IMG/VR virus record: IMGVR_UViG_3300010158_000027
Span: 1-64,000 of that record
DNA length: 64,000 bases
Strand: one strand, 5' to 3'
Positions 2,750 through 62,181 of the stretch are shown piece by piece. A program made the position numbers and the translations under genes. Position 1 is the stretch's first letter; each line of letters starts with the position of its first letter. The notes beneath the pieces are model-generated. The model saw only the letters and a program-made list of their open reading frames with translations. It searched no databases and was not told the origin of the DNA.

Positions 2750-2972
2750 AATGTTCCCAACAACTATCCCTCATATACAAAAATAAATTTCCAGAAAAAT
2801 TTATATGTAAAATGAAATCCTTATAATATGTAAAGTATCTCCCCATTTCTAAAACAGGTGGGGATTTTTTGTATATTGTTATGGAATTTCTAAAAAAATT
2901 TTTAACACAAAATCTCCCCCCTACCCCCCTCTTTATTAATGTGCCTTGTATTTATAATTAAACGAATAAACT

Positions 2973-30447: not shown

Positions 30448-30448
30448 T

Positions 30449-33400
30449 ATGGAAATAAAAATTTACGGTGAAGATTCACCATTAAGTGGGGGAACAAGAT
30501 ATGTAACAGCCATAAGTGCCGAAACGGGGTTTTTTGATTCTTTTACCATCACCGACATTCAATCGGGATCGTCAGTTGCTAGTTTATTTATAACGGAATC
30601 GGGATCCGTTATATCGGGAGAAACTAATAATTTTACGGGAGACACGTATTGGACATCAGGAACTACAGGAACTACATCAATTAAAGCAATTAATAGTACG
30701 GGGTTAGACTCTACGGGTAATCGGTCAGTGGCTTGGGGTAATCAAACTTTAGCTCTGGGGGATGATTCTACAGCTTGGGGTTATCTTACAACTGCCGGAT
30801 GGAAAGGATTTACAGTATCATCGGTAGTTGCCGGTTTAATTACCATATCAGATAACGTAGATTATTCTACTGAATTTACAAGTGGAACCGTACTGTTAGA
30901 CAGTACTCAATACACATATAACACAGTTACATTTAGTTCTCCAAATTTTACGATTCAATTAAACGATACTACCGTTAATACTGGAACATATGTATCCGAT
31001 TTATCAAATTTAAATAGTCCGTTAGCCACAGTTACTGTAGGTAATGGTGCTCACTCCGCTGGGGACAGTACTAAATCGTTAGGTAATTACTCCCACGCAG
31101 AAGGTCAAAATACTTTAGCCTCAGGAGATTATTCACACGCAGAAGGATATTATGCAATATCATCTGGCGATTATTCTCACGCAGAAGGTTCTGGTACAAT
31201 AGCATCTGGTAGTTATTCACACGCCGAAGGTGACAATACCGTAGCTATTGGAAATAATTCTCACGCAGAAGGTACTAGTACAACAGCATCTGGAAAATCA
31301 TCACATGCTGAAGGTAATACCACAACAGCAGTTGCGGATTATTCACACGCAGAAGGTGGTAATACAACAGCATCTGGTGTCTATTCTCATGCAGAAGGTA
31401 ATAATACTACCGCATCTGGAATTAGTTCACACGCAGAAGGTGACAGTACAACGGCATCCGGTGATTATTCTCACGCAGAAGGTAATAATACTACCGCATC
31501 TGGAATTGGTTCACACGCAGAAGGTGCTAGTACAATATCTTCCGGTGATTTTTCCCACACAGAAGGATTTCAAACCAAAACCGGTGGTAACAACGGATAT
31601 TTAGCAATATCAGTATCGGCTGGGTTAGTTACTTTAGATGCGTCATATGGAGACGTATCCGCAGATTACCCTACAGGAAATTATTTATATCTTAATGATT
31701 ACGCATATAATAATAGTTACACGACAGTTGCATTAATAATCGACTCAACATCGTTTAATGGAACCGAAACTGAAATTCTATTAATAGACACTAGCATAAC
31801 AACTACAACCGCGGTTGTTGGAAACATAAACCTAAACCCTGCTAACTGGACCGGTGACCAGGTATATGGTGCACCAAATTCACACGCAGAAGGTGATAAT
31901 ACATTAGCATCTGGATATGCGTCACACGCAGAAGGTGTATCTGCAATTGCCGCTGGTGGTAATTCACATGCTGAAGGAAACTTCGCAATCGCGATTGGTG
32001 GTTATTCACACGCAGAAGGTACCAATACTAAATCAACCGGAGATGGTTCTCATGCAGAGGGTATTACCACTCAATCATCGGGTCTGTATTCACACGCAGA
32101 AGGCCAAGATACACTCACAATTGGACAATATTCTCACGCTGAAGGTAATTTAACGACGGCCGGGTGGCGAGCATTTACTGTAACATCAGTAGTGGCAGGT
32201 TTAATTACTATATCAGATAACGTAGATTATACAGCAGCATTTACTAGCGGTGAAGTACTATTAGATACTCGAGTGTATACATATAATACCATTGCATTTA
32301 CTTCCCCAGATTTCACAATTCAATTAGATGATACTACAGTTAATTCTGGAACATATGTAGCTGATTTCTCAAATTTAAATAGTCCATTAGCTAGTTATAT
32401 TGCTGGAACTGGTGCTCATTCAACAGGTAATGGTACTAAAGCATTAGGTGATTTTTCCGAAACGGGTGGTGATATTACGTTAGCGTCTGGTTATGGGTCA
32501 CATGCAGAAGGGTCTTCGACTCAAGCCACAGGAGATGCTTCCCATTCAGAAGGTGTTAATACACGAGCAGAAGGTCCACATGCACACTCCGAAGGTTATC
32601 TTACAAGAGCATCTGGTGATGCGGCACACGCAGAAGGTAAAACATCTATAGCTCATGGTTACTATTCTCACGCCGAAGGCCAACAAACAACAGCATATGG
32701 TCAATCTTCTCATGCAGAAGGCAACAGTACAACGGCATCTGGATCATATTCGCATGCTGAAGGTGCCGGTACTGAAACTAGAGGTAATGCCGCACACGCT
32801 GAAGGGTCTTCGACTATTGCAATTGGTGATTATTCACACACAGAAGGTAATACTACTCAATCAGGTTGGAGAGGGTTCGGCGTATCATCAGTAGTCGCTG
32901 GATTAATCACTATTAATGATGATATAGATTATTCAGCCGAATTCCCTGGTAGTGATGTATTATTAGATAATATAATTTATTCTTATAACTCAATTTCGTT
33001 TAGTTCTCCTAGTTTTACTATACAATTAGATGACATTACAATTAATACAGGAACGTATGTAGCTGATTTAACTAATTTAACTAGTACCGCATATCTAGCA
33101 ACCACACTTGGTGCTTATTCCCATGCAGAAGGTGAAAATACATTGGCATCTGGTCCGGCATCACACGCAGAAGGTGAAAGTACATCAGCTACTAGTGATT
33201 ATTCCCACGCAGAAGGTTTTAATACTTTAGCATCTGGTAGTTACTCTCACGCTGAAGGTGGTGGCACAACGGCATCCGGAGAGTATTCTCACGCTGAAGG
33301 TGGTGGCACAACGGCATCTGGTGGTGCATCACACGCAGAAGGTCAAGCAACTCAAGCATCTGGTCAATCATCTCACGCAGAAGGTGAAAGTACAACGGCA

Positions 33401-36400
33401 TCTGGCGATTATTCGCACGCAGAAGGTGCTGGTACCGTAGCATCTGGATATGCGGCACACGCAGAAGGTGATGGAACAATATCATCTGGTAACTATTCCC
33501 ACTCAGAAGGTGATGGAACAATATCATCTGGTAACTATTCCCACGCAGAAGGTACGTCAACGATTGCTGGATGGCGAGCATTTACTGTAACATCAGTAGT
33601 GTCTGGTTTAATAACTATATCAGATAACGTAGATTACTCTTCTGTATTTAATAGTAATATTGTTATATTAGATAACAATGAATACGGATATAACACAATT
33701 GCGTTCAGTTCACCAAATTTTACAATTCAATTAAATGATACTAACGTCAATACTGGAACATATGTTGCCGATTTCTTAAATTTAAATAGTCCATTAGCGA
33801 CCACCACCTTAGGGAATGGTACCCACTCCGCCGGGGATGGTACTAAAGCATTTGGTAATTATTCACACGCAGAAGGAACGGGAACGGTATCATATGGGGT
33901 ATCATCACACTCCGAAGGTTACGGATCATACACTTATGGGGATTATAGTCACTCAGAAGGTTATGCATCATCAACATATGGAAATCAGAGCCACGCTGAA
34001 GGTGGATCGACAGCAACATTTGGAAATTACAGCCACGCTGAAGGTTATGGTACGCAATCAGGTTGGAGAGCGTTTCCAGTATCCTCAGTAGTTGCTGGGT
34101 TAATAACCATATCGAATAATGTTGATTACACTTCTCAATTTACTTTGGGTGGGGGTAAAGTCATATTAGACAATAATTTATACACTTATAATACAATTTC
34201 ATACTCAGCGCCAAACTTTACAATACAATTAGATAACATCACGGTTAGTACTGGTAGTTATGTTGCGGATTATACTAATTTAAGTAGCTCGTGGGCGACA
34301 ATAGTCTTAGGTACTGCTTCTCACTCTGAAGGAACTGGAAATATATCGACGGGTGATTATAGTCACGCCGAAGGACAAGGAACGACTTCTATCGGTCAAA
34401 GTTCGCATTCTGAAGGGTTTTTAACAAAATCAATTGGAATTGCATCTCACTCTGAAGGTTATAGTACGACATCTATTGGTTCGTATTCCCATTCTGCTGG
34501 TTATAACGCAATCGCCAGCGGTAATACATCATTTATCCATTCAACTAATTCAGTTGTTGGTGGAGATAGAAGTGTGGTGTTAGGTGGACAAAACATTACA
34601 GGATTAACAAACGATACGGTTTATGTTCCTTATTTTAATTTAAATTATACCCCAATATTCAGTAATTCAAATACGGAAATTTTAAGTAGAAATTCATCAA
34701 ATGGTGATGTCGAATATACGCCACTAAGCGCATTTACAAGTCTTGATACGTATGTCACTGGATATACATATTCACCAACCACAAATACATTCACTATTAA
34801 ACAAAATCAAGGACAACCTAACATATCGGCATCGTTTGATAGTGTATCTGGTTTGACAGTTAACGGTTTATTGGAAGCAAATTCAATGTCGGCTAACACT
34901 TTTAGTGCCACAAGTATAGATAAAGTAGATTATATCATATTCAATACTGGAACAACAAGTGCAGCAACTGTTGCTGGTATGGTTTATTTTGATAATACAG
35001 AAAAATCGTTATCATATAATACATCAATTAATCAAGGAGTTACCGTTAACTTAGGACAACAAAACTATATTAGAGTGTTTAATAATAGTGGTGTTGATAT
35101 TCAAAGAGGTAAAGCTTTGGAGGTTTTATCTGCTTATAGTGGGTTACCATCAGTAACTCTCGCAGTTAATAAACATACGGGTTTTAATATTATTGGTGTT
35201 TCATCTGAAATCATACCTAACAACACCGAAGGTATTGCTATCACAAACGGAATTATTTCAGATATTCAATTAACCGGTATAACGGTTGGTTCTTTAGTTT
35301 ACGCATCAGATACCGTACCAGGTAAATTAGATGATGTTACAAATTATCTAAACTTCCCTCTTACGGCAAGAACAAATAGTGTTGGTTATGTGGTTCAAAC
35401 TGGAATCACAACTGGTAAATTATTCGTTAATATTAACAATGAGAATTCAGTATTATCTTTAACCGATTTAGAACGAAATGTATTGGAAGGAAATACATTA
35501 TCAACCGGTTTATTTGGGTTTACTGGGATGACAACTGGATCAACAACAACTTTTAATGTTGCTCCGTTGAAAGGTTGGTTGATTAAAAATACATATGAAT
35601 ATGCTACATTACCAGATGTTCAGAGTGTTAATTATACTGGTGGTACAAACATATCAGTCACTAATATTGCTTCAGCAGATTCAACATTTATTTTAATCAA
35701 TAGTGCTATAACTATTACACAACAAACAACATTTCCAACACCACAACAGAGAAGAGAAAATATCTATCTGGGTAAGATTAATCACCCAAATAGAACGAGT
35801 ATATTAAATATAAACAATACAGCTGATTATGATGTATCACCAATGTCATCTTTGCGTGATTTATGGTCACCTATAAGATTGATAAATCAAGGAATCGTAC
35901 CTTCACCAAATGGTGCTAATCTAAGTTTTAACACATCGGCCGGTATACTGTGGGGTAATGGTATTAATTGGCATAATAATCAATTAAGTCCTAATAATGT
36001 TAGTATTGCAGCAAAAGTTCCAGTATCGTTTAATTATAGAACACAAACTGGTGGAACTTCCACTAGTGTCACAGTTATTGACCCTCGTAATTATGATGTT
36101 GGTGGTGTAATAACTAGTATTGGTAATGCTGGTCTTGATGATGCAACTAATCAACGAATATATATGTACCCTACTGGTGTTATTAATGTTCTTTATGGTC
36201 AAACAGTATATACCAATTTAACTGCCGCTGTTGCTGCTGTACAGTCAGAGTCATTTATACCTTACCCTAATGCTGATAGCAGTGGTATACTTATTGGTGT
36301 ACTTTCGGTTAGAAATGATATTGGTACTGATGGACAATCATTAACCAATACGAGTTATGCTAAATTCACTTTTGTTTCTAAGTTTGGTGAAAGTTTTGGT

Positions 36401-40722: not shown

Positions 40723-43122
40723 ATGTCGAATAAAAGAATTTCACAGTTACCATATATAGGTGCAGATAAAATTTCGGGCAATACCTTAGTCCCTTTAGTC
40801 ACTTACTATTCAGCGACTACAGGAACTACCGTACACTCAAATCTCGGTGATGTACAATCGTTTATACTAAGCGGACAGACATTAACGGGAGGAACGTATA
40901 ACTCAACATCGGGTAATCTTACGTTAGTTAATAATAGTGGTGGAACCATAATAATTTCAGGAATAACTTCATCAGCGGGTACTAGTGGGACATCTGGTAC
41001 GTCAGGTATTAATGGTATAAATGGTACTAGCGGTATTGACGGCACTAGTGGAATATCAGGAACTAGCGGTATTGACGGAACTTCAGGGTTAAGCGGAACT
41101 AGCGGTATTGACGGAACTTCAGGGTTAAGCGGAACTAGTGGTATCGATGGAACGTCAGGTGTAAACGGTACTAGCGGCACATCAGGAACGAGCGGTATTG
41201 ATGGGACTTCAGGTGTAAGTGGAACTAGCGGAAGTAGTGGTACGTCGGGAATTAACGGAACTAGCGGGGTAAGTGGTACATCAGGTATTAACGGAACGTC
41301 AGGAACGAGTGGAATAAATGGTACTAGTGGTATTAACGGCACTAGTGGAGAGTCGGGATCATCAGGGACTAGCGGAATAAACGGTAGTTCAGGTACGTCA
41401 GGTACAAGTGGAATAATTTATATTACAAATCAAACCACAGGTTCGGTGACGTATTACACAACATTGGAACTTGCGAGAGATGGATCTGTTTCTGGAGATA
41501 CTATATATGTAAATACTGGAACATATATAGTAACTACAACCGCAGCTAACGGATTAAGTAAAAGTGGAGTGAATTGGTATTTTCAACCAGGTACGGTAGT
41601 GTCTAAAGTAACATCAGGTCACATATTTAGTGATAATGGTTTTGCTCTTAATGCGAATGTGTATGGAAATGGAACTTTTACTAAATCAACAACCACAGGT
41701 AATATATTTTATAATACATTATCAAACGCAATATTTGAAGCAAAATCAGTTACATCAAGTATAGATGATTGTTTTTTAACAACAACAGCTTCAAATTTAT
41801 ATTTCAATGTTAAATTTGCCGTATCAAGTGGTGGTAGAGTTTTACATATAGCCGGTTATTCAACAAGTCTTATAAAAATTGATATGATATCTTGGAGATC
41901 CACAGCGTCTAATTGTATCGGAGGAACTACCTGGTGGTATAATACTGATGTTCAAGTAACTGGGGAATTATTAGAATCTACAACGGCACAAGCTGTGGGT
42001 AATTATAATAGTGGAGCCGTATTAAATTTAAATATTACAAAAATACTTGGAGTAACTTATGCTTTATCTTCAGGTGATGGAAGTAATGGATATCCAAATA
42101 TTATAAATTGTGCTTATTGTACAGGTATATCAGATATTGGTAAAAATTATATCCTTAATGGTCAATTTGGGGTATTAAATTATGTTGGTAGTAATGGTGC
42201 CTTTGTTAATGGTGGAAGATTTGCAACAATTACTTTAACAGGTGGTGGACATGTAATTACAACTCTTGGGGCTAATTTTACACTACCTTCTACTGGTACA
42301 ATAACACAAAGTTCTGGGGTATTAGACGTAACTATTGATACTTTTCATTATGGTATTGGATTTACCATAACAGGAGGTGTTTGTAATATTAGGAATCAAT
42401 CAGTATCAAACCAATTATCAGGAGCTTTAGATAGAATAGTAAATGGTGGAACATTAAACTTATATACTAATTTTATTCATGGTGGAAATCCTGATTCTGG
42501 AGTATGGTATGCGATGAAATTACAATCAGGAACATTAAGACTATTAGCTTCAGTACAAAATAACTTTAATGTTGCATCAAGTAATTTAGCGGCACACGGA
42601 ATAGTATGGGTTGGTGGTAAATTAATTATTGATAGATCAACTATTTTTATAACAGATACCGTTGCATTACCGATACAAGCAACAACCGCTGGTTTATCTT
42701 TAAGAGTTCTTACAGGTGGATTAAGCACAAATATTACGGCGGATGGGGGAGTATTACCAGGTAAAAAAATGAAATATAAATTTACCATAAGCGCAGTTGC
42801 AGCAACAGGAATAAATATTTTAATACCAACCTCTTATAACATTTCAGAATCAAACACTGGGGTGTATAATACTAAAGCTCTTTTAGCTCAACGAATGGCT
42901 TCATTAATTAATGGTAGTCCATTTTTAAATGTTGCGGTAATTGCTACACAAGACATACCAGGAACTGATGAATACTTTTATATAGAAACATTAACCGCGG
43001 GCCCCACATTTTCATATAATACTCCTGTTAATTTTTCAGCTATTAATATTCAAAGATGGAATAGTTATACTATAACGAACATAACTGGAGGATCAATTTT
43101 AGAAAACTCAAACGTAGAATAA
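40723..43122 (+). CDS. Fibre protein with GTS collagen-like stalk and beta-helix-like C-terminal domain
   Basis: [10 protein letters not shown] start; GTS block; [11 protein letters not shown] beta-helix cap motif. Confidence 0.75.
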
Positions 43123-43123
43123 G

Positions 43124-43459
43124 ATGGAATTACAAAACATAGTAGTAGACTTTAAAGAAATCACAACAACCACAATGTATAAAGACGTACATTATGATGT
43201 GGATGTTATGTCGGAGATTGAACCCGTTAAAATTGAGTTTGAGATTGCTTATGGTATCACATTCGATAGAGCAATAATACAATTAACTGAGGATCAACAT
43301 TTATGTGAACCAAGAATACTTTGTCAAAAAGAAGATGAACAAACGATTATAACTATTGTAGATATAAGAGATAATCATCCATCACTTATGTTGGAATTAG
43401 ATAAAATAAAATTATTAATTGAAGAACAATTACTTAATAATACGAATAATGGCGATTAG
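43124..43459 (+). CDS. Small acidic protein after fibre (chaperone candidate)
   Basis: Position and size only. Confidence 0.6.
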
Positions 43460-45338
43460 AGATAAGATAATAAGTGGGGGTAATGGTATAAATTTTACTA
43501 AGGAGACGGATTCTAGTACTGACTGGACTGGAATTACCAATAACACATATTTTAGAGATGTTGCGGACGGATTAATACATTATAAAAATTCGTCTGGATC
43601 AATATTAGAAATATATAATCTAAGTACTTCGGGGACTAGTGGAACATCAGGTACTTCCGGAATAAATGGTATTAACGGAACGTCAGGAACGAGTGGTGTA
43701 AATGGTTTAAACGGAACTAGCGGAACATCGGGTATAAATGGGACGTCTGGAACAAGCGGTATAAATGGGACGTCAGGAATCAACGGTACAATCGGTTTAA
43801 GTGGAACATCAGGAACAAGTGGTACCAATGGGTTAAACGGCACATCTGGAACGAGCGGATCATCAGGGACTAGTGGAATTAATGGAACATCAGGTACTAG
43901 CGGTAGAAATGGGACATCTGGTATAGATGGAACGTCTGGTACGTCAGGTAGAAATGGTACTTCAGGGACTAGCGGGATATCACCAACAGTATCAGGGTCT
44001 AATGACCAAATACTGACTTCAAATGGTGCTGGTGGAATTATTGCCGAATCTCTTTTAACATTTGACGGTACAAAATTAAGCGTATTGTATCAAGCCGGTG
44101 ATGAAGGTGGTGAAATATTATTAAATAAACCTGAAACCAACACTACCATTTCAGGTACAGGGGTTACTTTTGATGTATGGCAAAATAGAATTAGGTTTTT
44201 TGAACAAGGTGGAACGGCAAGAGGTGCGTATATTGATATAACTGAATGTGCTGCCGGTGTCGGTACAAACCTTTTAACTGGTGGGTCAACTTCATCAGGA
44301 ACCAGTGGCACATCGGGTAGAAATGGTACATCTGGTATTAACGGAACTAGCGGGACATCCGGAACAAGTGGTGTTAATGGTAGTAGTGGAACTAGTGGAG
44401 TTAATGGTACTTCAGGAATAAACGGCACTAGTGGTACGTCAGGTAGAAATGGAACATCAGGAATTGATGGTACGTCGGGTACAAGTGGTATTAACGGTAC
44501 ATCAGGAACTAGTGGTGTTAACGGCACATCTGGTACTTCAGGAATCAATGGACAAAATGGAACATCTGGAACATCTGGAACATCTGGAACTTCAGGAACG
44601 AGCGGTATAGCACTTATATTAAATAATACCAACAATTACGTTTTAACCGCGACAGGTACTTCAGGGGTTATAAATGGTGAATCTAACTTAACTTTTGATG
44701 GTACAACTGCAATTATAACAGGAAATCTAAATGTATCCGGAGGTACACAATCTATCTTCTCTGGAAATAGTACTTTAGAGTTAGTTAAGATAATTCAAAC
44801 GGGAACAGGGGATGCACTTGTTGTTGAGGATTCATCAAATGGTGACACTTCACATTTCGTTATCGACGCTAGTGGTAATACGTCAATAGGAACATCTACA
44901 ACGGGAAGAAAGTTAACAGTGTCTGGAGATTCAACATTCATTCATAATCCATTAACTCTTTTAACCGCATCAGTTACCGCATATGGGGATATAGTAACTT
45001 TTGGTAGTGGGTCATTAACTGCGGGTAGTTTATATTACCTAGGTAGTGGAGGATCATGGACAGCTGCAGATGCCAGTTCAAGTACATCATCAACTGGGTT
45101 ATTAGGTATCGCTTTAGGTACAACCGCTTCATCAGGGTTATTAATAAAGGGGTACGCCAGATCCACCACATACTCAGCAACAACAGGTCAGATATTATAC
45201 GTATCAACAACCGCCGGTTCAATCACTCCAACCGCGCCATCAGCCGCTACCGAAATAATTAGAATAATTGGGTATCAGTTATCCACAAATGATGATGTCA
45301 TATACTTTACCCCTTCAAATGATTGGATAGAATTATAA
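43449..45338 (+). CDS. Fibre protein with two GTS collagen-like blocks
   Basis: GTS blocks at about 43623-43980 and 44290-44607. Confidence 0.75.
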
Positions 45339-47728: not shown

Positions 47729-50700
47729 ATGTTAAAAGATGAAAAGTGTTATGTTTATTACGCAACTGAAAAGTATTTTGAAATCGCAAAAAAATCCATT
47801 GAATCAATTCGTAAATATTCTGATTTACCCATATACCTTTATTTATTAAACTCCGATTTAAAGTTGGAGATTGATAATACGTTCACAATAAAATGGGAAT
47901 GTGATGTTGATTTTGATTCGGATATGTTCGAGTCGTTTGAAAACAAAAATTTCTACATTAATAGGAGAAATAAAAATATCTATAAAATTTTAATACAACG
48001 TCCATTAATTGTTAAACATTGTTTAGAGAATTATTCGAAGGTGGTTTGTTATGTTGACTCGGATTCCATATCCACCCCCTATGTTGATAATATATTTGAC
48101 TTTTATAACAAGGATTCAAACCACCCCTATTTTACTCAAGGAGTTTATGATTATTTAAATTTTTATGGTAGAGGTGGAATCCCAATCGATGAAAACAGTA
48201 CAAACACATTAGAGTACCCACTATGTGAGTTATTAAACACCAATCAAAAAAATAGAATCACATATAGACAAACGGGATATTTCGTTTCAAATGAAAAGTG
48301 CATTGATTTTTTAAATGAATGGTCGGAAGTCTGTAATCACCCGAAGGTTTTGGAGAACCCAGAACACTACGCTCCCTATCATGAAGAAACTGTTATGAAT
48401 GTACTTTTATGGAAATATAACTATCAGGATGGTTTACCCTATATGTATGTTAATGGTTCATTAGAAAGAGTGGATGAAATATATAATACCATTAAATTTA
48501 ATGGTGAGGATAATTTGGTATCCGAGTTATATAAAATACCAAAAAATAAAGAAACCTTATTATTTTTTCACGGAGAAAAAAGAGTGGAGGTTATGGAACA
48601 GATGATTCGGAGTATTGAAAAAAATTATAAAATGAAACTCCTATTTTTGGCTCCACATTTATCCACAGGTGGTATGCCGTCATTTCTTTTAAAAAGAATT
48701 CAGGAACTTATTAAATATAATAAAGACATTGAAATTTTTGTTATTGAATATTCATATTATGGTCCATCGTACGTTGTCCAAAGAAACCAAATTATAGATA
48801 TTATAGGGGATGATCATTTTTTTGAATTGGGTTCAAATAAAGATAGGGTAATTGATATAATAAAAGAAAACAATATTGATATTGTTCACATTGATGAAAA
48901 CGTTGAGATGTTAAATGAACCTATGTCAACAAATGTTTTAAACTTATTATATTCAGATGATCGAACATGGAGAATGGTGGAGACGTGTCATAATATTTGG
49001 TTTAATGCAAATCAAAATAAAATATATAACCCCGACTCTTATATATTTTGCACATCATGGCATGAGTCAAATACGTTTTCAGATTTACCCTCACCAAAAA
49101 CAACCATACAATTTCCTTTGGAGAATAAAAAACCAACATTGGATGACAGGTTGGAATCCAAAAGACAATTAAATTTTGAATCAGATAAAATCCATATAAT
49201 TAATGTTGGGCTTTGGACAAGTGGCAAAAACCAAAAAGAGGGTGTTGGGGTTGCAAAACTTTTATATGAGACAAATCCTGAAATAGTATTTCATTTCATT
49301 GGAAACCAAGCCCCCAATTTTAAAGACTATTGGGAACCCATAATGTGCGATATCCCACCAAACGTTAAGGTGTGGGGTGAAATGGATAATGTTGATTTAT
49401 TTATGCAATCTTCGGATATTTTAATGTTTAATTCAACATTAGAGTGTAATCCGCTAGTAGTTAGAGAGGCGATTTCACATGAATTAAAAATTATCACAAG
49501 AACATTACCCCAATACATGGGAATTTATGATAGGTACGTATACCCAATTGAATCCTCGAATGTTAATGAACTAAAAGATTTAATTTTAAAGGTAATTAAA
49601 TCTGAAAACAAATATAAAAATGTTATCGATGAGAATTATGAGTTTTCAAAAACTCACATCGACACATATAAACAAACATTACTTAATTCACCAATAAAAC
49701 AAAATAAAATGGAAAACAAAATTCAAATAGTGACTCATTTTGTCGAAGCCCCCTTTATTGAAATAAAAGGTCAGAGTTCGGCAGACTATAAAATTAAGGT
49801 ATATAATGAAAACGATAGTTGTATTTACGAGAATACCATAAAGGTTAACCATTGGGTAAAATTAAATAGGGGATACTACACAAAATGGCGAACTGAAATA
49901 TATGAAGATAATGAATTAATCTATAATGAAACTATAAACTTAAAAGATAAAAGGGTTTATGTATCTTTTGAAAGTAAATCATTGGGGGACACACTCTCTT
50001 GGATTCCGTATGTGGAGGAATTTAGAAAAAAACACGAATGTAAAGTTATTGTCTCCACGTTTTTAAATAATATACTCGAAAACCAATACCCAGAAATTGA
50101 GTTTGTTAACCCCAACTCGGAGGTTCACAATTTACATGCACTCTATAGAATAGGTTGGTTTTATAAACCCGACGGTAATTTTGATTCAAATAGACACCCA
50201 TATGATCCGAAATCACAACCACTTCAAAAAACCGCATCAGACATTTTAGGTTTAGAATTTAAAGAAATAAAACCAAACATAAAATACCCAAGACTTTCAA
50301 AAAAGAAAAAGGTGGGAATTGGTTTACACGGAACTGCGCAATCAAAATATTGGAACAATCCTGATGGATGGCAAGAGGTGGTGAATTACCTTACCGGAAA
50401 GGGATATGAGGTGGTTTTATACTCTAAAGAGGAAAACGGTTACATGGGGAATAAACATCCGTATGGTGTCACTAAATTTAAGGAAGGATCATTAAATAAT
50501 TTAATTTATGATATGTCAACTTGTGAGTTTTTCATAGGTATTGGGTCGGGACTTAGTTGGCTCGCTTGGTCGATAGATTTGCCCATCGTTTTAATATCGG
50601 GGTTTAGTGAAAAATGGACGGAGACTCAATCTAATACGTATCGAGTTTTAAATGATAACGTTTGTCATGGGTGTTTTAATATGTGTAGATTAAACCCTTC

Positions 50701-50815
50701 AGATTGGAATTGGTGTCCAATGTTAAAAGATACGGATAGAATGTTTGAATGCACAAAATCAATCACATCTAAAATGGTAATTAATCAAATCGATCAACTA
50801 ATAATATCGCAATAA
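47729..50815 (+). CDS. Three-domain glycosyltransferase: GT-A (DxD), GT-B (GT4-like) and a TibC/Aah-like heptosyltransferase domain
   Basis: YVDSDS; FLAPHLSTGG (from 48632); from about 49709 SLGD, KYWNN, SGLSWLAW, ISGFS and the Cys cluster CHGC..WCP..FECT. Confidence 0.85.
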   Translation: MLKDEKCYVYYATEKYFEIAKKSIESIRKYSDLPIYLYLLNSDLKLEIDNTFTIKWECDVDFDSDMFESFENKNFYINRRNKNIYKILIQRPLIVKHCLENYSKVVCYVDSDSISTPYVDNIFDFYNKDSNHPYFTQGVYDYLNFYGRGGIPIDENSTNTLEYPLCELLNTNQKNRITYRQTGYFVSNEKCIDFLNEWSEVCNHPKVLENPEHYAPYHEETVMNVLLWKYNYQDGLPYMYVNGSLERVDEIYNTIKFNGEDNLVSELYKIPKNKETLLFFHGEKRVEVMEQMIRSIEKNYKMKLLFLAPHLSTGGMPSFLLKRIQELIKYNKDIEIFVIEYSYYGPSYVVQRNQIIDIIGDDHFFELGSNKDRVIDIIKENNIDIVHIDENVEMLNEPMSTNVLNLLYSDDRTWRMVETCHNIWFNANQNKIYNPDSYIFCTSWHESNTFSDLPSPKTTIQFPLENKKPTLDDRLESKRQLNFESDKIHIINVGLWTSGKNQKEGVGVAKLLYETNPEIVFHFIGNQAPNFKDYWEPIMCDIPPNVKVWGEMDNVDLFMQSSDILMFNSTLECNPLVVREAISHELKIITRTLPQYMGIYDRYVYPIESSNVNELKDLILKVIKSENKYKNVIDENYEFSKTHIDTYKQTLLNSPIKQNKMENKIQIVTHFVEAPFIEIKGQSSADYKIKVYNENDSCIYENTIKVNHWVKLNRGYYTKWRTEIYEDNELIYNETINLKDKRVYVSFESKSLGDTLSWIPYVEEFRKKHECKVIVSTFLNNILENQYPEIEFVNPNSEVHNLHALYRIGWFYKPDGNFDSNRHPYDPKSQPLQKTASDILGLEFKEIKPNIKYPRLSKKKKVGIGLHGTAQSKYWNNPDGWQEVVNYLTGKGYEVVLYSKEENGYMGNKHPYGVTKFKEGSLNNLIYDMSTCEFFIGIGSGLSWLAWSIDLPIVLISGFSEKWTETQSNTYRVLNDNVCHGCFNMCRLNPSDWNWCPMLKDTDRMFECTKSITSKMVINQIDQLIISQ

Positions 50816-50848
50816 AAAACCCCCACTATTTCTAATGGGGGGTCAATA

Positions 50849-51379
50849 TTAATTGTTAGACATTATTTTACAAAATTCTAACATCTGGTTATGGGTTAAA
50901 TTATTTTTAGCGTGATTACAAGTGATACTAATAAATTGAATATTACCTTTAACATAACCTTTATCACTATCAATCCGATCTAAAGATGCGGTGTTTAAAT
51001 TAGTCCTATCACCATTATGGTTGGGGTGTAATAATTGTATATGACTATAAACACAGATACCATTTTGCTTATTCCATTGATCTAAAATATCGTCCAAAGT
51101 TACACCTATCTCGTGTTTTCTTTTTTTTAGTCTACGGTAATGTTCTCTTAATCCTGTGTAGTTGTCCTTTCTATTATTAGACATACCCAATAAGAATTTT
51201 ACATTCCCTTCAACATATTTAAGTAAATGTTTATTATTTATTTTACCACTACACGTTAATGAACAATAGTTTTTTCTACCAATCTTTTCATTTCGATTAA
51301 TCTCTGATTTGTCCTTAAGAAATGTTATATTACATTCAGGGTTGGAGCAAATTGTTAGTTCTTTTTTTCTTTTTTCCAT
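50849..51379 (-). CDS. Free-standing HNH-like (His-Me finger) endonuclease
   Basis: N-terminal CxxxxC...CSLTC zinc finger; CVYS...ASLDRIDSDKGYVKGNIQFISITCNHAKN. Confidence 0.75.
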   Translation of the reverse strand: MEKRKKELTICSNPECNITFLKDKSEINRNEKIGRKNYCSLTCSGKINNKHLLKYVEGNVKFLLGMSNNRKDNYTGLREHYRRLKKRKHEIGVTLDDILDQWNKQNGICVYSHIQLLHPNHNGDRTNLNTASLDRIDSDKGYVKGNIQFISITCNHAKNNLTHNQMLEFCKIMSNN

Positions 51380-51480
51380 AATCCTTTTATTATAAATATA
51401 TACATCTCCACAAAAAACCCATCTCCACAAAAAAATACATAAAAAAATTACCACTATTTCTAATGGTAAATCTTTTGTCT

Positions 51481-51520
51481 TCTAGCGATGTTTATAGTTT
51501 TACTTATAAACACCGCTAGA
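51481..51520 (-). terminator. Hairpin 3' of the tmRNA gene
   Basis: TCTAGCG-A-TGTTTATA...TATAAACA-C-CGCTAGA inverted repeat. Confidence 0.6.
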
Positions 51521-51539
51521 AGGTACAAAAGATCCAGGG

Positions 51540-52156
51540 TGGAGGTGCGGGGACTCGCAAAATCAATAATTTTCATTACTGCGTGGACTATATCATCATC
51601 TCATTGAGATGTCGGACGCTCTAGCTGGTTATTAAGTATATCGCTATACTCCAGTAGTCTCTGCACCTTCTTACTCTGTAAGCTTGGCTCAGGATTGCCA
51701 CCACCATTACGTGCTGAGGTTTCCCTGAGTTCATCCGATTTTTAATCTATTGTCACCAATAGATGGGTCCGACATTAAACCCCGGTCCATAACATCCTGT
51801 AAAACAAGGACTACACGTTTAGGTTAACGTTTTCTAACGTTCCAAAATATTTGATTTTTCACACCGACCAACAAACGGTGATAGTCCTTTCGGGGGACCA
51901 TACCCGTTTTGTTTTCTTTTAGAGTGTAAACTAACTCATCAACGACTTCTGTTGCTAGGTTGAATGTCTGACCGACCCCCGTTTCCGAACTTAAATTAAG
52001 CTACAGTAACTTCAGATTCTCTTACTAAACCAAGAGTTTCCATTTTCGATAATACGTCGCCGATTGTTTTTTGTGAATCAGTTTTTAAAGAGATTAACTC
52101 AGTCTCTACGTGCCCTTTATTCTCAGCCGACATCTGTCAAATCCAAAAACACCCCC
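51540..52156 (-). ncRNA. ssrA: tmRNA, intron-containing (exon 1 52156-51778, exon 2 51557-51540; CCA not encoded)
   Basis: 5' GGGGGTG..GGATTTGAC; 3' CACCTCCA with G3-U; T-arm CGGGG-TT|CGAGT-CCCCG restored on splicing; tag ORF 52061-51996. Confidence 0.92.
51558..51777 (-). mobile_element. ORF-less group I intron (IC3-like, 220 nt) in the tmRNA T-loop
   Basis: P1 GGGUU/GACCC with U-G at the 5' splice site; P3 UCGGAUG/CGUCCGA; P4 CUCAGG/CCUGAG; P7 GACUA/UAGUC; P9 GAAA hairpin; terminal G. Confidence 0.9.
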
Positions 52157-52175
52157 ATAAATCAAAGAACTTTAA

Positions 52176-52183
52176 CAAAGATA
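52176..52183 (-). promoter_or_regulatory. Bacteroidota-type -7 promoter element TAnnTTTG (representative of 8 sites)
   Basis: Also minus 53-60, 4220-4227, 17486-17493, 54446-54453, 59558-59565; plus 7025-7032, 9332-9339. Confidence 0.7.
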
Positions 52184-52221
52184 ATACAACAATTCCGATT
52201 ATCCAATATATTTATATAAAT

Positions 52222-53406
52222 ATGTTTAAAAAAAGGTTTATATACGAACAAGAGGAAGAGGAAGTCGAATTAAATGACTTTCAAAAAATCCTAGCACTTC
52301 ATAAAAAAAGAATGCATCCAAATCAGGTTGAGTTTTTTAATTCGGAAGGTAAGGATTTTTCAGATATTATATCAATCAATTACGATGGGATTACCTTCAA
52401 TTTTAATGATTTACAGGAATATTTAGAGTTCTTTTTTCCAGAAATATATGGTGTGGATGGTTCCGATGGGGCCTACGAGGCTGAGTACTTCCAACAGATG
52501 TATAATGGAAATTGGAGCTGGCATAACGAATATTGGGATAGATCTACTGATGATTGGAATGAGGGGTATATTGTTGGAGCAATGAAAAGTCAAAGTTTAG
52601 AGACATTAAAAGAAATTATAGATGCGGTTTCGCCTGGTGATAGTAAATGTATTGTCTTTAAAGATGGGGAGTATGTATTGGATAACTCTAGCGATAAGTC
52701 TAACGCCGAAACAACCATTACGTCAATTTTAGAAGGTTTGGGGGTTGAGGATAAGATAAAGGAAGCATATGTTGATGCTCAAGTGGACGCTGTGAGTGAT
52801 GAAGTCTCTAAATATATTGAAGACACCTATGGTGATTGTTTTTCTGAACTTGGAATTGAAAACGATTCGGCAAGACACTTTTTTTGGAAATATTCAATGG
52901 ATTGGGGTTCTATGGTTTTATTGTTTGCTCGTTTTGGTACTGAAAACGATAGTTTTTTAGACTTACTTTTTGAAGCGATTAACGCCACAGCGATTAAACA
53001 TCTTCCAGAATATTATGAAATGCAATATAACGTTTGGAATGAAGAAAAGTTCACTAAAACATATGTCAATGAACTAAGTACCATTTTTGATAAACTATTA
53101 ATTGAGGTATCTGAAAACCACAATAAAGGGTATTATGAAGCTATTTCAAAGATTACAAAAATCGGTGGGTTTAATACCTGGATAACCTCTAAAAATGAAA
53201 AAGTTAAACTTATGATTAGAAATCTTGATCCCGAAACCCTAAAAGTTGATTTTTCTGTTATCAATGGTAATTATGGTTCTTGGCATTCAAAAAAAGGTAG
53301 ATCTACCGTTGATGAAATAATCAACCTACTCTATAATGAAAGTATGTTTGATGTTGAGGATTTCAGGGAACATTATTTAAGATTTATTCAAAAGACGATT
53401 CTTTAA
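52222..53406 (+). CDS. Acidic hypothetical protein with short leader (MFKKRFIYEQ)
   Basis: ORF; TATTTAT at 52209-52215. Confidence 0.8.
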   Translation: MFKKRFIYEQEEEEVELNDFQKILALHKKRMHPNQVEFFNSEGKDFSDIISINYDGITFNFNDLQEYLEFFFPEIYGVDGSDGAYEAEYFQQMYNGNWSWHNEYWDRSTDDWNEGYIVGAMKSQSLETLKEIIDAVSPGDSKCIVFKDGEYVLDNSSDKSNAETTITSILEGLGVEDKIKEAYVDAQVDAVSDEVSKYIEDTYGDCFSELGIENDSARHFFWKYSMDWGSMVLLFARFGTENDSFLDLLFEAINATAIKHLPEYYEMQYNVWNEEKFTKTYVNELSTIFDKLLIEVSENHNKGYYEAISKITKIGGFNTWITSKNEKVKLMIRNLDPETLKVDFSVINGNYGSWHSKKGRSTVDEIINLLYNESMFDVEDFREHYLRFIQKTIL

Positions 53407-60921: not shown

Positions 60922-62181
60922 ATGGCAGATTTAAGACCCTTAGGTAGTGAAAAATTACAAGGTATGGATAAAATAAAACGTATAATGGAAATTGCACGTT
61001 ATAACGAATCACCTAAACAGGAAATTAACGAACTTTCAACTACGAACTATACAATTAAATTATCTGATGGTAATACATATGCTATAGTAAAAGAAAAATT
61101 AGGGTATATCATTAAAAATGGTTTAAATGAATCAACTTTTGAATATTCAGAACCTATTAGACATAGAAAATACTATCGTTCATATTCTGAAGCGATGAAA
61201 AAACTAAACCTAATGGTTGTTGAAATTAATAGAACTACAGGTTTTGAGGAAAACGTACCACTTATCGGAGAACAACAATCTGATACAAAAAAAAAATTCA
61301 TTTTAAAAACACCTAAACCAAAAAACGACGCGTCAATACCCTCACCGGTAGCCGCTTCTGAACCACCAATGGCTCCACCAATGGCTCCAACACCACCTGC
61401 TGATGATATGGGAACAACTCCACCACCAGCTGATGATATGGGAATGTCACCAGCAGATGATATGGGTGTTCCTCCTTCTGATGATATGGGAACGCCACCA
61501 GCAGATGATATGGGAATGGATCCTTCTGATGATATGGGAATGGATCCTTCTGACGATATGGGTGAAGACGATGAGGAAGCTCAAGGACCAATGGGGTTAA
61601 AGTCAATTCAAAAATTGACAGGAAAGTTAAGTCAAAAAATTAGAGCCTTCGATAAAGAAAAAGGTTTAGATTCTCAAGACATTAAATACGTTTTAAACTC
61701 AATCATTTCGGCTTTAGATTTAGAGAATTTAGATGAAGACGATAAAGATGACGTTCTTTCAAAATTTGATGAGTCAGATGAATATGGTGAAGAAGGGCCT
61801 GGAGACTTAGATTTTAAAGACACAGATACGGAAATGGGTGTGGAAGGTGATGAACCTACAGACGAAGAGTACCCACAACCACCAGTTAGTGAATCTTCAG
61901 TAGATAAAGTTTTAACTAGTTACTTCAATATTAAATCAACTGAAAAACCACTAATAGAAGAAAAAAGAAAAAAAGATTATTTAAAAAACAAATTAAATAA
62001 ACTATCAGTTAAGTCTGAAATCGGAAGGCTTAGTGAAAGTAATTCACAATCGGACGCAGCGTTATCCATTATGGAAAACTATGAAGGGGCTAAGTTCATT
62101 GGAAAAACGAATAAAGATAATTTAATATTTGTGATTGAAGATAAACAATACAAAGTAACACCAGCAGGAAGAATTTTATGA
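60922..62181 (+). CDS. Prohead core/scaffold-like protein with Pro/Asp/Met repeats
   Basis: Seven P(A/S)DDMG repeats, acidic linkers, several hydrophobic-x-E sites, upstream of terL. Confidence 0.5.
   Translation: MADLRPLGSEKLQGMDKIKRIMEIARYNESPKQEINELSTTNYTIKLSDGNTYAIVKEKLGYIIKNGLNESTFEYSEPIRHRKYYRSYSEAMKKLNLMVVEINRTTGFEENVPLIGEQQSDTKKKFILKTPKPKNDASIPSPVAASEPPMAPPMAPTPPADDMGTTPPPADDMGMSPADDMGVPPSDDMGTPPADDMGMDPSDDMGMDPSDDMGEDDEEAQGPMGLKSIQKLTGKLSQKIRAFDKEKGLDSQDIKYVLNSIISALDLENLDEDDKDDVLSKFDESDEYGEEGPGDLDFKDTDTEMGVEGDEPTDEEYPQPPVSESSVDKVLTSYFNIKSTEKPLIEEKRKKDYLKNKLNKLSVKSEIGRLSESNSQSDAALSIMENYEGAKFIGKTNKDNLIFVIEDKQYKVTPAGRIL

What the first reader, a model, noticed from the sequence alone, without database searches (positions are those of the whole stretch)
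50823..51466. HNH cassette flanked by a perfect 16-bp direct repeat next to the ORF-less intron (possible collaborative homing)
Seen: CCACTATTTCTAATGG occurs at 50823-50838 and 51451-51466, bracketing the HNH gene and its own TATTTAT (51392-51398, minus). The left copy is the core of a terminator hairpin. A tandem CATCTCCACAAAAAA duplication lies at 51403 and 51420. Known: free-standing phage endonucleases can mobilise a neighbouring intron by cutting intron-less alleles. Inference: a recent insertion with target-site duplication whose enzyme cuts the intron-less tmRNA T-arm.
Basis: partly seen in the sequence, partly recalled or inferred. Interest (0 to 1): 0.62.

Follow-up and report, generated by a model that had tools for sequence, protein, structure and literature searches.

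The report
Mobile endonuclease cassette beside phage tmRNA
A selfish DNA-cutting enzyme gene sits just after a jumbo phage's tmRNA gene, between two copies of a terminator hairpin, and in phages and bacteria alike the small intron in that tmRNA gene was found only where this enzyme gene is also present.

Summary
The 16-mer occurs exactly twice in the 281-kb phage genome, at 50823-50838 and 51451-51466, on either side of a 176-aa endonuclease gene.

It is not a transposon-type target-site duplication. Each copy is the whole inner stem and GAAA loop of a minus-strand terminator hairpin. One hairpin ends the tmRNA and the other ends the endonuclease gene. Their outer stems differ by compensating pairs.

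The cassette is an insertion, but not a recent one. Of 96 related phage tmRNA loci, 80 lack it, and near-isogenic filled and empty pairs exist. Its promoter, including the "tandem duplication", is conserved among homologues only 50% identical.

The collaborative-homing idea gains strong comparative support:
- The 220-nt ORF-less intron occurs only beside this gene: 8 of 8 phage loci, none of 80 loci without the gene, and 3 of 3 Hymenobacteraceae ssrA introns.
- The intron is 96% conserved while its flanks are 75-79% conserved.
- A 39%-identical homologue lies inside the same intron in crAss-like phage cr128_1.

The enzyme is a His-less, PacI-type His-Me finger with no Pfam match. Cleavage at the T-loop is inferred, not shown.

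The parts
51778..52156 (-). tmRNA exon 1: 5' acceptor strand, tag reading frame, pseudoknots, and the 5' half of the T-arm ending ...GGGGTT
   Evidence: Alignment with intact phage tmRNAs that Rfam and ARAGORN recognise. The splice junction was read from the sequence.
51558..51777 (-). ORF-less group I intron of 220 nt in the T-loop, between TT and CGA (loop position 3)
   Evidence: Rfam RF00028, 92.7 bits against a cut-off of 50. Boundaries come from comparison with intron-less relatives. It is 94-97% identical to the introns of 7 other phage loci.
51538..51557 (-). tmRNA exon 2: 3' half of the T-arm, 3' acceptor strand with the G3:U pair partner, and ACC
51467..51536 (-). Long hairpin that is a remnant of the leader and first ~9 codons of a different (GIY-YIG/NUMOD3-type) free-standing endonuclease gene. 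The start codon has changed from ATG to ATC.
   Evidence: Fold of -36.1 kcal/mol, z = -10.2. Alignment with the intact leader and ORF that follow the tmRNA in L078, L026, L027, L064 and L065. Those ORFs match PHROG 314 'homing endonuclease' at 3e-35 and NUMOD3.
51448..51469 (-). T1: terminator hairpin after the tmRNA. It holds the right copy of the 16-mer (51451-51466). The outer stem is TTA/TAA, and the U-run follows at 51441-51447.
   Evidence: 9-bp stem with a GAAA loop. It folds at -8.4 kcal/mol as minus-strand RNA against -4.2 for the plus strand. Sequence.
51381..51440 (-). Cassette promoter and leader: two direct GTGGA-type boxes (51403-51417 and 51420-51434), the TATTTAT box (51392-51398) and an AAAGGA ribosome-binding-like site
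   Evidence: The same architecture lies upstream of every homologue examined, including those at 50% identity. The boxes are unique to this spot in the genome.
50849..51379 (-). Endonuclease gene of 176 aa: N-terminal Cys4 zinc ribbon plus a C-terminal His-less (PacI-type) His-Me finger motif
   Evidence: PHROG 3322 'endonuclease' 2e-19, PHROG 1035 1e-14, PHROG 3118 'HNH endonuclease' 3e-12. No Pfam match. Family invariants. Weak profile match to PacI.
50820..50841 (-). T2: terminator hairpin after the endonuclease gene. It holds the left copy of the 16-mer (50823-50838). The outer stem is CCC/GGG. It lies 4 nt after the stop codon of the convergent glycosyltransferase gene.
   Evidence: Scored as terminator-like on the minus strand. 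It folds at -15.2 kcal/mol as minus-strand RNA against -11.0 for the plus strand.
47729..50815 (+). Convergent 1028-aa multi-domain glycosyltransferase gene, the resident right-hand neighbour
   Evidence: Pfam Glycos_transf_1 and Glyco_transf_9. In the cassette-less relative L074 its homologue follows the tmRNA directly, after a single terminator.

Best explanation
The stretch 50820-51469 is a free-standing homing-endonuclease cassette lodged directly 3' of a jumbo phage's tmRNA gene.

**Anatomy (minus strand)**
- tmRNA with a 220-nt ORF-less group I intron in its T-loop.
- A remnant of an earlier, different endonuclease gene.
- Terminator T1.
- A cassette-specific two-box promoter.
- A 176-aa endonuclease gene (zinc ribbon plus a PacI-type His-Me finger in which Arg replaces the usual His and an invariant Tyr is available as the catalytic residue).
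- Terminator T2.

**The repeat.** The perfect 16-bp repeat is the inner stem and GAAA loop of T1 and T2. These are two working terminators, not the footprint of a staggered cut. In several relatives the cassette likewise lies between two copies of the resident tmRNA terminator. I infer that the duplicated terminator ends both transcripts. I also infer that it serves as short homology on the far side of the cassette. That homology would let double-strand-break repair carry the cassette into phages with different downstream genes, and would let it be deleted again.

**How it most likely works (inferred).** The enzyme cuts tmRNA genes that lack the cassette, at or near the T-loop. Repair from the cassette-bearing genome then copies the cassette, the intron, or both. 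The intron splits the site and protects its carrier. This is collaborative homing of the F-CphI/psbA kind.

**Shown versus inferred**
- Shown: the anatomy, the sporadic distribution, the filled and empty pairs, the intron-endonuclease co-occurrence, and the intron-embedded homologue.
- Inferred: nuclease activity, the cleavage site, immunity through the intron, and the role of the terminator repeat in recombination.
For: 1. **Terminators.** Both 16-mers are 9-bp GAAA hairpins that are more stable as minus-strand RNA and are followed by U-runs.
2. **Sporadic distribution.** Of 96 related phage tmRNA loci with enough flank, 80 have neither gene nor intron, 8 have the gene only and 8 have both. 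On the tmRNA-exon tree the gene needs at least 11 changes and the intron at least 8.
3. **Near-isogenic pairs.** L008 equals L132 plus a 221-nt intron and a 635-nt cassette, with flanks 98.6-99.3% identical. L004 equals L121 plus a 620-nt cassette.
4. **Terminator duplication in relatives.** In L005 a ~40-nt terminator unit stands on both sides of promoter plus gene, while the related cassette-less locus L063 (tmRNA 89% identical) has one copy. The right-hand copy in L089 even keeps a tmRNA-3'-end-like CACCACCA.
5. **Intron only with the gene.** Fisher p = 1.4e-6 for the unbiased tmRNA-based sample. Independent pairs go 6-7 to 0 the same way.
6. **Intron conservation.** The intron is 96.2% conserved, against 79.0% for exon 1 and 75.3% for the endonuclease gene. 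It is the higher value in 28 of 28 pairs. It also occurs in at least 3 endonuclease subclades.
7. **Intron-embedded homologue.** crAss-like phage cr128_1 has an unannotated tmRNA with a homologous intron at the same TT|CGA site. A 39%-identical homologue (E 1e-38) lies inside the intron's 3' part.
8. **Bacteria.** Hymenobacter edaphi ssrA has the same arrangement of intron, terminator and free-standing homologue. In 150 Hymenobacteraceae genomes the full-length homologue and the tmRNA intron occur in the same 3 genomes. Homologues also abut tmRNA genes in a Sulfurovum MAG and a Legionella-labelled MAG.
9. **Hot spot.** A second endonuclease family occupies the same spot in other relatives and left a remnant in the window.
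10. **Nuclease family.** PHROG endonuclease families match. The LDRIDS..GY..N..N.AK motif aligns with the His-less active site of PacI, whose Tyr-based chemistry is described in PMC5714182.
Against: - No cleavage data exist, so the target could lie elsewhere in or near the tmRNA gene.
- Six loci carry the gene beside an uninterrupted tmRNA. Some of them (L007, L009) have T-arms identical to those of cassette-less relatives. Immunity by site variation is therefore not demonstrated.
- The endonuclease genes are far more diverged than the intron. The two do not always travel as one unit.
- The structure model is poor exactly at the catalytic motif (pLDDT below 50), and the fold search found nothing.
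- The PacI match is weak (E 0.13).
- No cassette-less relative with a single copy of this particular 16-mer was found. The nearest empty site with the same downstream gene (L074) has an unrelated terminator.
- The origin of the perfect 16-mer in this genome is unresolved. Duplication, gene conversion, and two copies of a widely used hairpin all remain possible.
Confidence: 0.68

Rival explanations
1. Classical target-site duplication. A mobile HNH element inserted recently by a staggered cut 16 bp wide in a single pre-existing terminator.
For: - The repeat is perfect and brackets the gene and its promoter.
- Relatives show empty sites with one terminator and filled sites with two.
Against: - The repeat ends are symmetric about the hairpin axis.
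- Under a TSD, the reconstructed empty site (CCC-16mer-TAA) would lack an outer stem. The element ends would then have to complement both old flanks by chance, which needs 6 matching bases.
- Cassette boundaries and repeat lengths differ between lineages: about 40 nt in L005, about 50 nt in L089, and almost none in L008.
- The gene is old and diverged.
- From general knowledge, homing endonucleases spread by break repair, which leaves no TSD.
Confidence: 0.05
2. The two 16-mers share no duplication history. They are two independent uses of a hairpin core that is common in phages, and their position around the gene only reflects that every gene needs a terminator.
For: - The same 16-mer occurs in many unrelated viral contigs.
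- In 43 of 100 cases the three flanking bases on each side pair with each other (36 contexts, 13 outer triplets). The reversed-sequence control gives 0 of 58.
- Some contigs have 2-4 copies between successive small genes.
- The outer stems in the window differ completely.
Against: - Only these two copies exist in 281 kb.
- In relatives the two terminators around the cassette are also more alike than chance, and in L005 and L089 they are clearly duplicated units.
Confidence: 0.25
3. The protein is not selfish. It is an accessory factor of the phage trans-translation module, for example a tmRNA maturation or regulatory protein, which would explain why it always sits next to a tmRNA gene.
For: - It is adjacent to tmRNA in every locus examined, in phages and in three bacterial phyla.
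- Neighbours in distant relatives include SmpB, ClpP, DnaJ and RF-1-domain genes.
- The canonical catalytic His is missing.
Against: - It is absent from 80 of 96 related phage tmRNA loci and from 147 of 150 Hymenobacteraceae genomes.
- Near-isogenic pairs exist with and without it.
- A homologue lies antisense inside an intron.
- A different endonuclease family replaces it at the same spot.
- A degenerate 39-aa remnant sits beside an intact tmRNA in G031.
Confidence: 0.07
4. The enzyme is a homing endonuclease, but it cuts somewhere other than the intron insertion site (intron-less homing, as with T4 SegG or MobE). The intron is then only a passenger that is co-converted, or is tolerated better in genomes with the gene.
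For: - The gene occurs without the intron in 6 phage lineages, some with ordinary T-arms.
- The intron and the gene have very different divergence.
Against: - The intron is never seen without the gene: 0 of 80 phage loci, and 0 of 147 bacterial genomes for tmRNA introns.
- The homologue embedded in the same intron in cr128_1 implies a target at that insertion site.
Confidence: 0.2

Closest known systems
F-CphI beside the intron-containing psbA gene of cyanophage S-PM2 (collaborative homing; Zeng et al. 2009, as described in PMC6083498)
   Same: A free-standing endonuclease gene lies next to a gene that holds an ORF-less group I intron. The enzyme is reported to cut the intron-less allele, and the intron protects its carrier. 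The layout and the co-occurrence found here match this.
   Different: - F-CphI belongs to the Endo VII-type DHHRN family with catalytic His residues. The enzyme here is a His-less PacI-type motif with a separate zinc ribbon and no Pfam match.
- The target here is an RNA gene (tmRNA), not a protein gene.
- Cleavage is untested here.
T4 MobE and trans-homing of the nrdB intron with defunct I-TevIII (PMC2790892)
   Same: A free-standing HNH-family gene in an intergenic spot next to its target mobilises itself together with a neighbouring intron that cannot move by itself.
   Different: - The T4 intron still carries a dead endonuclease gene, whereas this intron has no ORF.
- No sequence relationship to MobE was tested.
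Bonocora and Shub 2009 pathway: a free-standing HNH gene next to the DNA polymerase gene of T3, and the intron-borne relative in phage PhiI (recalled from memory)
   Same: The same endonuclease family appears free-standing beside the target and inside an intron at that target. The window and cr128_1 mirror these stages.
   Different: T3 gene 5.3 protein is a standard HNH and shows no similarity to the window protein. The target gene and hosts also differ.
Group I introns in the tmRNA T-loop (PMC11915505)
   Same: The intron lies at loop position 3, a subsite which that survey found only in class Bacteroidia. It is short and ORF-less, like 96% of the tmRNA introns surveyed.
   Different: - That survey reports only LAGLIDADG genes inside 4% of the introns. 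In the passages I read it mentions no neighbouring free-standing endonuclease.
- The present cases are on phage genomes as well as bacterial ones.
Restriction endonuclease PacI (PDB 3LDY/3M7K), His-Me finger group 20
   Same: The motif D-R..D-S..G-Y..N..N..K lacks the general-base His and has a Tyr in the loop between the strands.
   Different: - The profile match is only weak (E 0.13).
- PacI has two zinc sites around the catalytic core and acts as a restriction enzyme.
- The fold of the window protein could not be confirmed.
PeSL elements of T4-type phages (Arbiol, Comeau and Krisch 2010; recalled from memory)
   Same: Direct repeats of a stem-loop regulatory element flank small optional genes and are thought to mediate their gain and loss by recombination.
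   Different: - PeSLs combine the stem-loop with an early promoter and occur many times per genome.
- Here the repeat is a terminator pair around one cassette, and the promoter boxes are unique to it.
- Membership was not tested.

Membership tests
HNH / His-Me finger nucleases | General-base His at the end of the first strand (the first H of HNH) | tested here: not met
   The position is an invariant Arg (R135, in SLDRID) in all 38 aligned family members.
HNH / His-Me finger nucleases | Metal-binding Asp/Asn pattern and Asn in the helix (D..N..N/H) | tested here: met
   D134, N146, N155 and K158 are invariant. PHROG 'endonuclease' and 'HNH endonuclease' families match at 2e-19 to 3e-12.
HNH / His-Me finger nucleases | Match to a curated Pfam HNH-type model | tested here: not met
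   No Pfam family matched at E up to 10 for the window protein. None of 38 members hit an HNH model.
HNH / His-Me finger nucleases | Beta-beta-alpha-metal fold | tested here: inconclusive
   AlphaFold2 model with mean pLDDT 69 and below 50 over residues 124-145. Foldseek against PDB found nothing at E up to 0.001.
PacI-type (His-less, Tyr-dependent) His-Me finger | Tyr in the loop after the first strand replaces the His, in a D-R..DS..GY context | tested here: inconclusive
   G141-Y142 are invariant. The motif aligns with PacI residues 84-137, but only at E 0.13. PacI chemistry is taken from PMC5714182.
Free-standing homing endonuclease gene | Sporadic presence among close relatives at one fixed site next to a conserved gene | tested here: met
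   16 of 96 phage tmRNA loci carry it, needing at least 11 changes on the tmRNA tree. Near-isogenic filled and empty pairs exist. 3 of 150 Hymenobacteraceae genomes carry it.
Free-standing homing endonuclease gene | Site-specific cleavage of the allele that lacks the gene | not testable with these tools
   Needs a cleavage assay.
Collaborative homing (endonuclease plus ORF-less intron) | A self-splicing intron without an ORF in the neighbouring gene | tested here: met
   RF00028 at 92.7 bits. The intron is 220 nt with no ORF, and exon junctions restore a 7-nt T-loop. Splicing itself was not observed.
Collaborative homing (endonuclease plus ORF-less intron) | Intron and endonuclease gene co-occur | tested here: met
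   8 of 8 phage introns and 3 of 3 Hymenobacteraceae tmRNA introns lie beside the gene, and none lies without it.
Collaborative homing (endonuclease plus ORF-less intron) | The enzyme cuts at the intron insertion site and the intron blocks cutting | not testable with these tools
   There is only indirect support: a homologue lies inside the same intron in cr128_1.
Transposon-type target-site duplication | Identical repeats abut the element ends, the empty site has one copy, and repeat ends are unrelated to local structure | tested here: not met
   The repeat equals the symmetric inner hairpin. Both copies have their own complementary outer stems. Junctions vary between lineages. No empty site with this 16-mer was found.
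Intrinsic (rho-independent) terminator | G+C-containing hairpin followed by a U-run on the transcribed strand | tested here: met
   The left copy is scored by the scan on the minus strand. The right copy folds alike and is followed by seven U, read. Function was not measured.

The most novel reading that the evidence does not exclude
A previously unnamed endonuclease family (zinc ribbon plus a His-less, PacI-type His-Me finger, with no Pfam model) is the dedicated mobility partner of the position-3 T-loop intron of tmRNA genes in Bacteroidota and their phages. It is caught in all three stages of the proposed route to mobile introns:
- alone beside an uninterrupted tmRNA;
- beside an ORF-less intron;
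- inside the intron.

The duplicated terminator hairpins would act as portable homology arms that let the cassette move between genomes with different neighbours. This would explain why most tmRNA introns look ORF-less yet spread.
Probability: 0.45. Interest if true: 0.72.

Novelty: new member of a known kind. Interest (0 to 1): 0.62.

Why it matters
Collaborative homing rests on very few worked examples (psbA/F-CphI, the T3/PhiI polymerase gene, nrdB/MobE), all in protein-coding genes.

This would be a case in a structural RNA gene, with many natural replicates. There are filled and empty near-isogenic pairs, 8 independent intron gains in phages, parallel cases on bacterial chromosomes, and an intron-embedded relative. 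The proposed route from free-standing endonuclease to mobile intron can therefore be tested on one target.

It also offers an answer to an open point in the 2025 tmRNA survey, namely why only 4% of tmRNA introns carry an endonuclease gene.

It adds a family with PacI-like chemistry, lacking the catalytic His, to the candidate homing enzymes.

The specific claim of a fresh target-site duplication is not what makes the locus interesting, and it does not hold.

Tried and rejected
- **Read mapping.** Laying public reads or contigs on 50600-52250 was meant to look for cassette-less or spliced forms in the same populations.
- **Structure.** The AlphaFold2 model was too poor at the catalytic motif, and Foldseek against PDB gave only noise.
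- **Pfam.** No hit for the protein or for 38 relatives. A single-sequence search of PDB found nothing.
- **Empty site for this 16-mer.** Searching the viral collection for the 16-mer returned only unrelated contigs, none with this tmRNA or gene.
- **T3 gene 5.3.** Its protein is not related to the window protein.
- **Promoter boxes versus tmRNA end.** I considered whether the two boxes co-vary with the reverse complement of the tmRNA 3' end. Some lineages fit (L044, L103) and others do not (L011, L009), so I treat it as unproven.
- **Paralogues.** The genome has none.
- **Spliced tmRNA.** Exons were joined only inside a local script, to build the exon tree.
Full report
**Setting**

The window is the first 64 kb of a 281,269-bp viral record with 33% G+C, judged 96% complete. 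Promoter-like motifs, the closest relatives of the intron and the bacterial homologues all point to a Bacteroidota host. The DNA occurs in freshwater metagenomes.

**Check of the observation**

The 16-mer stands at 50823-50838 and 51451-51466, and nowhere else in the genome. Exact direct repeats of this length within 1 kb are expected about 0.6 times per genome.

Between the copies lies a minus-strand ORF. The ORF list starts it at a GTG (51454). The conserved start is the ATG at 51379, which follows AAAGGA and the TATTTAT box, giving 176 aa.

**What the repeat is**

Read on the minus strand, which is the strand of the tmRNA and the endonuclease gene, each copy is a complete inner hairpin. It has a six-pair stem with one G-U pair and a GAAA loop.
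- In the left copy three C-G pairs extend the stem.
- In the right copy the pairs U-A, U-A and A-U extend it.
- Both are followed by a run of U.

They fold at -15.2 and -8.4 kcal/mol as minus-strand RNA, against -11.0 and -4.2 for the plus strand. The left one is scored as a terminator on the minus strand. So T1 (right copy) ends the tmRNA transcript, and T2 (left copy) ends the endonuclease transcript. T2 also closes the convergent glycosyltransferase gene.

A staggered-cut duplication does not fit. The repeat ends fall symmetrically on the hairpin axis. An ancestral single site would have had non-pairing flanks, and the element ends would have had to complement both old flanks by chance.

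**The neighbour**

Rfam finds a group I intron at 51564-51816 on the minus strand. Alignment with intact tmRNAs of related phages gives the structure:
- exon 1 at 52156-51778;
- a 220-nt ORF-less intron at 51777-51558;
- exon 2 at 51557 to about 51538.

The intron splits the T-loop between TT and CGA. This is loop position 3 in the numbering of a 2025 tmRNA survey, which found that subsite only in class Bacteroidia. The same survey found endonuclease genes in only 4% of tmRNA introns (PMC11915505).

**The protein**

- It has no Pfam match.
- It matches PHROG families named endonuclease, endonuclease VII and HNH endonuclease.
- A word search finds 289 relatives, none with a functional name (the sources call them 'hypothetical protein' at most) and many on contigs of 200-370 kb.
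- In 38 aligned members four Cys form an N-terminal zinc-ribbon pattern.
- The C-terminal motif SLDRIDS..GY..GN..F.S...N.AK is invariant at D134, R135, G141, Y142, N146, N155 and K158.

The usual general-base His is therefore an Arg throughout. A profile of the family weakly matches PacI over exactly this motif (E 0.13). PacI is the documented case in which the His is absent and a loop Tyr takes its role (PMC5714182).

I therefore call the protein a probable PacI-type His-Me finger nuclease. The fold could not be confirmed.

**The cassette is optional and old**

Five homologues found through the protein all sit directly after a phage tmRNA. So do all further loci fetched through homologous proteins.

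A scan with a conserved tmRNA pattern, independent of the protein, gave 119 more tmRNA loci. Among the 96 loci from all these searches with enough flank:
- 80 have neither gene nor intron;
- 8 have the gene only;
- 8 have both.

On a tree of the tmRNA exons the gene needs at least 11 changes and the intron at least 8.

Near-isogenic pairs exist. L008 is L132 plus a 221-nt intron and a 635-nt cassette, with flanks 98.6-99.3% identical. L004 is L121 plus a 620-nt cassette.

The cassette itself is diverged, at 61-75% protein identity to the window. Its promoter has two GTGGA-type boxes about 17 nt apart and then the TATTTAT box close to the start codon. This promoter recurs in every homologue, including those at 50% identity that lie in a DnaJ-ClpP-tmRNA neighbourhood. 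In the window's genome the boxes occur only here. The "tandem duplication" is therefore a conserved regulatory element.

**Terminator repeats in relatives**

- In L005 a unit of about 40 nt (spacer, hairpin, U-run) stands on both sides of promoter plus gene. The related cassette-less locus L063 (tmRNA 89% identical) has one copy.
- In L089 the downstream copy is preceded by a tmRNA-3'-end-like octamer.
- In L004 and L121 the single terminator of the empty site aligns with the 5' half of T1 and the 3' half of T2.
- In L008 the cassette lies exactly between the tmRNA end and the resident terminator. Only the stems are alike.

The boundaries thus vary, as expected for recombination rather than transposition.

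L074 has the window's synteny: tmRNA, then the convergent glycosyltransferase homologue. It has no cassette and one unrelated terminator. An empty site with this 16-mer was not found.

I infer that the duplicated terminator ends both transcripts and gives the cassette a short right-hand homology. That homology would allow transfer into genomes with different neighbours, and loss by recombination between the repeats. This role is not shown.

**An unexpected property of the 16-mer**

In the viral collection the same 16-mer occurs 100 times in contigs unrelated to this phage. In 43 of these cases the three bases on either side pair with each other, in 36 different contexts with 13 different outer triplets. 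The reversed sequence gives 0 of 58.

Some contigs carry 2-4 copies in successive intergenic regions. The core is therefore a widely used hairpin module. This weakens any argument that perfect identity means recency. I cannot explain it.

**A predecessor at the same spot**

The long hairpin between the tmRNA end and T1 (51467-51536; -36 kcal/mol, z = -10) aligns with the leader and first nine codons of a different endonuclease gene. In L026, L027, L064, L065, L078 and others that gene follows the tmRNA. It matches PHROG 314 'homing endonuclease' at 3e-35 and NUMOD3, and has a GIY-YIG-like N-terminus by eye. In the window its start codon has become ATC, and the homology ends inside the right 16-mer. 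The 3' flank of this tmRNA is therefore a hot spot for free-standing endonucleases.

**Intron and endonuclease**

- **Co-occurrence.** All 8 phage introns lie beside the gene, and none of the 80 gene-less loci has one. Fisher p = 1.4e-6 for the sample found through the tmRNA alone. Phylogenetically independent pairs go 6-7 to 0 the same way.
- **Conservation.** The introns are 96.2% identical on average. The first exon is 79.0% identical and the endonuclease gene 75.3%. The intron is the more conserved in 28 of 28 pairs.
- **Spread.** Intron-bearing loci lie in at least three endonuclease subclades, mixed with intron-less ones. The intron has therefore spread more recently than the endonuclease lineages split, and it is seen only in genomes that already have, or gain, the gene.
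- **Intron-embedded homologue.** In crAss-like phage cr128_1 an unannotated tmRNA has a homologous intron at the same junction. The annotated "endonuclease", 39% identical to the window protein, lies antisense inside the intron's 3' part.
- **Bacteria.** Hymenobacter edaphi ssrA shows intron, terminator and a free-standing homologue, as in the window. Among 150 Hymenobacteraceae genomes the full-length homologue and a tmRNA intron occur in the same three. A 39-aa remnant lies beside an intact tmRNA in a fourth. Five other group I introns, not in tmRNA, have no homologue nearby. Homologues also abut tmRNA genes in a Sulfurovum MAG and a Legionella-labelled MAG.

**Interpretation**

The simplest reading is the known scheme of collaborative homing (PMC6083498, PMC2790892). 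The enzyme cuts tmRNA genes at or near the T-loop, and repair copies the cassette, the intron or both. The intron, or a variant T-arm, protects the carrier.

The loci with the gene but no intron have either an unusual T-loop (AGTCGGA type) or a T-stem variant seen only in them. However, the first type also occurs without the gene. Immunity by variation is therefore possible but not shown. Cleavage, its site and the protective role of the intron are inferences.

**Novelty**

In the paper library, searches on tmRNA with free-standing endonucleases, and on tmRNA introns in crAss-like phages, turned up no paper whose title or abstract links tmRNA genes with a neighbouring free-standing endonuclease; I did not open the listed papers. 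A search on tmRNA and SmpB in jumbo phages returned nothing. The mechanism is of a known kind. The enzyme family, the RNA-gene target and the breadth of natural replicates are new.

**Limits**

Noticed in passing
window 50823-50838 and 51451-51466; loci L137-L228: The 16-nt hairpin core recurs in many unrelated viral contigs with different complementary outer stems (43 of 100, against 0 of 58 for a reversed control). Some contigs hold 2-4 copies between successive small genes (for example L141 at 7832, 8528, 9062 and 9365). I have no explanation for why one exact core is shared so widely.
   Followed up: partly
window 51467-51536 (minus): A very stable hairpin (-36 kcal/mol) is the remnant of the leader and first nine codons of a GIY-YIG/NUMOD3-type homing endonuclease gene. 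That gene follows the tmRNA intact in L026, L027, L064, L065 and L078.
   Followed up: yes
G000:C1:228753-229157; L004-L007 and L010-L012: GOLLD RNA (RF02032) lies within about 0.1-1 kb beyond the endonuclease gene in L004-L007 and L010, and just beyond the neighbouring SmpB gene in L011 and L012. In the window's phage it sits 177 kb away instead.
   Followed up: partly
L011 3548-3979; L013, L015, L016, L017: Some relatives carry a phage SmpB gene next to the cassette. More distant ones place the tmRNA and cassette after DnaJ, a metallopeptidase and ClpP, and near RF-1-domain genes, which looks like a ribosome-rescue and proteolysis neighbourhood. The window's genome has no SmpB match.
   Followed up: partly
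L287 (NC_055885.1, crAss-like phage cr128_1), locus about 2325-3641: This is an unannotated tmRNA gene with a T-loop group I intron. The annotated 'endonuclease' CDS lies antisense inside the 3' part of the intron.
   Followed up: yes
L290 (Hymenobacter edaphi) 1763-2960; G010, G092: Bacterial ssrA genes have the same position-3 intron, followed by a terminator and a free-standing homologue of the window protein. The homologue has the G+C content of the host.
   Followed up: yes
window 51403-51434 and the same region of L004-L113: The two promoter boxes resemble the reverse complement of the tmRNA 3' end in several lineages (exactly in L044, 9 of 10 bases in L103) but not in others. This could be an operator that mimics the target, or it could be chance.
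   Followed up: partly
L010 and L089, hairpin after the tmRNA: Two otherwise near-identical terminator hairpins differ by an inverted loop (TATTTTTA against TAAAAATA).
   Followed up: no
window 28179-33536, 41026-44432 and 61399-61528: There are dense short direct repeats inside coding regions, including Gly-rich collagen-like triplet repeats and a repeated HAEG-like motif. They account for most exact repeats in the window.
   Followed up: no
window 47729-50815: A 1028-aa ORF combines at least two glycosyltransferase domains (GT1 family and a GT9 heptosyltransferase-like domain). It is conserved next to the tmRNA in L074 and in the contig of the 97%-identical protein P0001.
   Followed up: no
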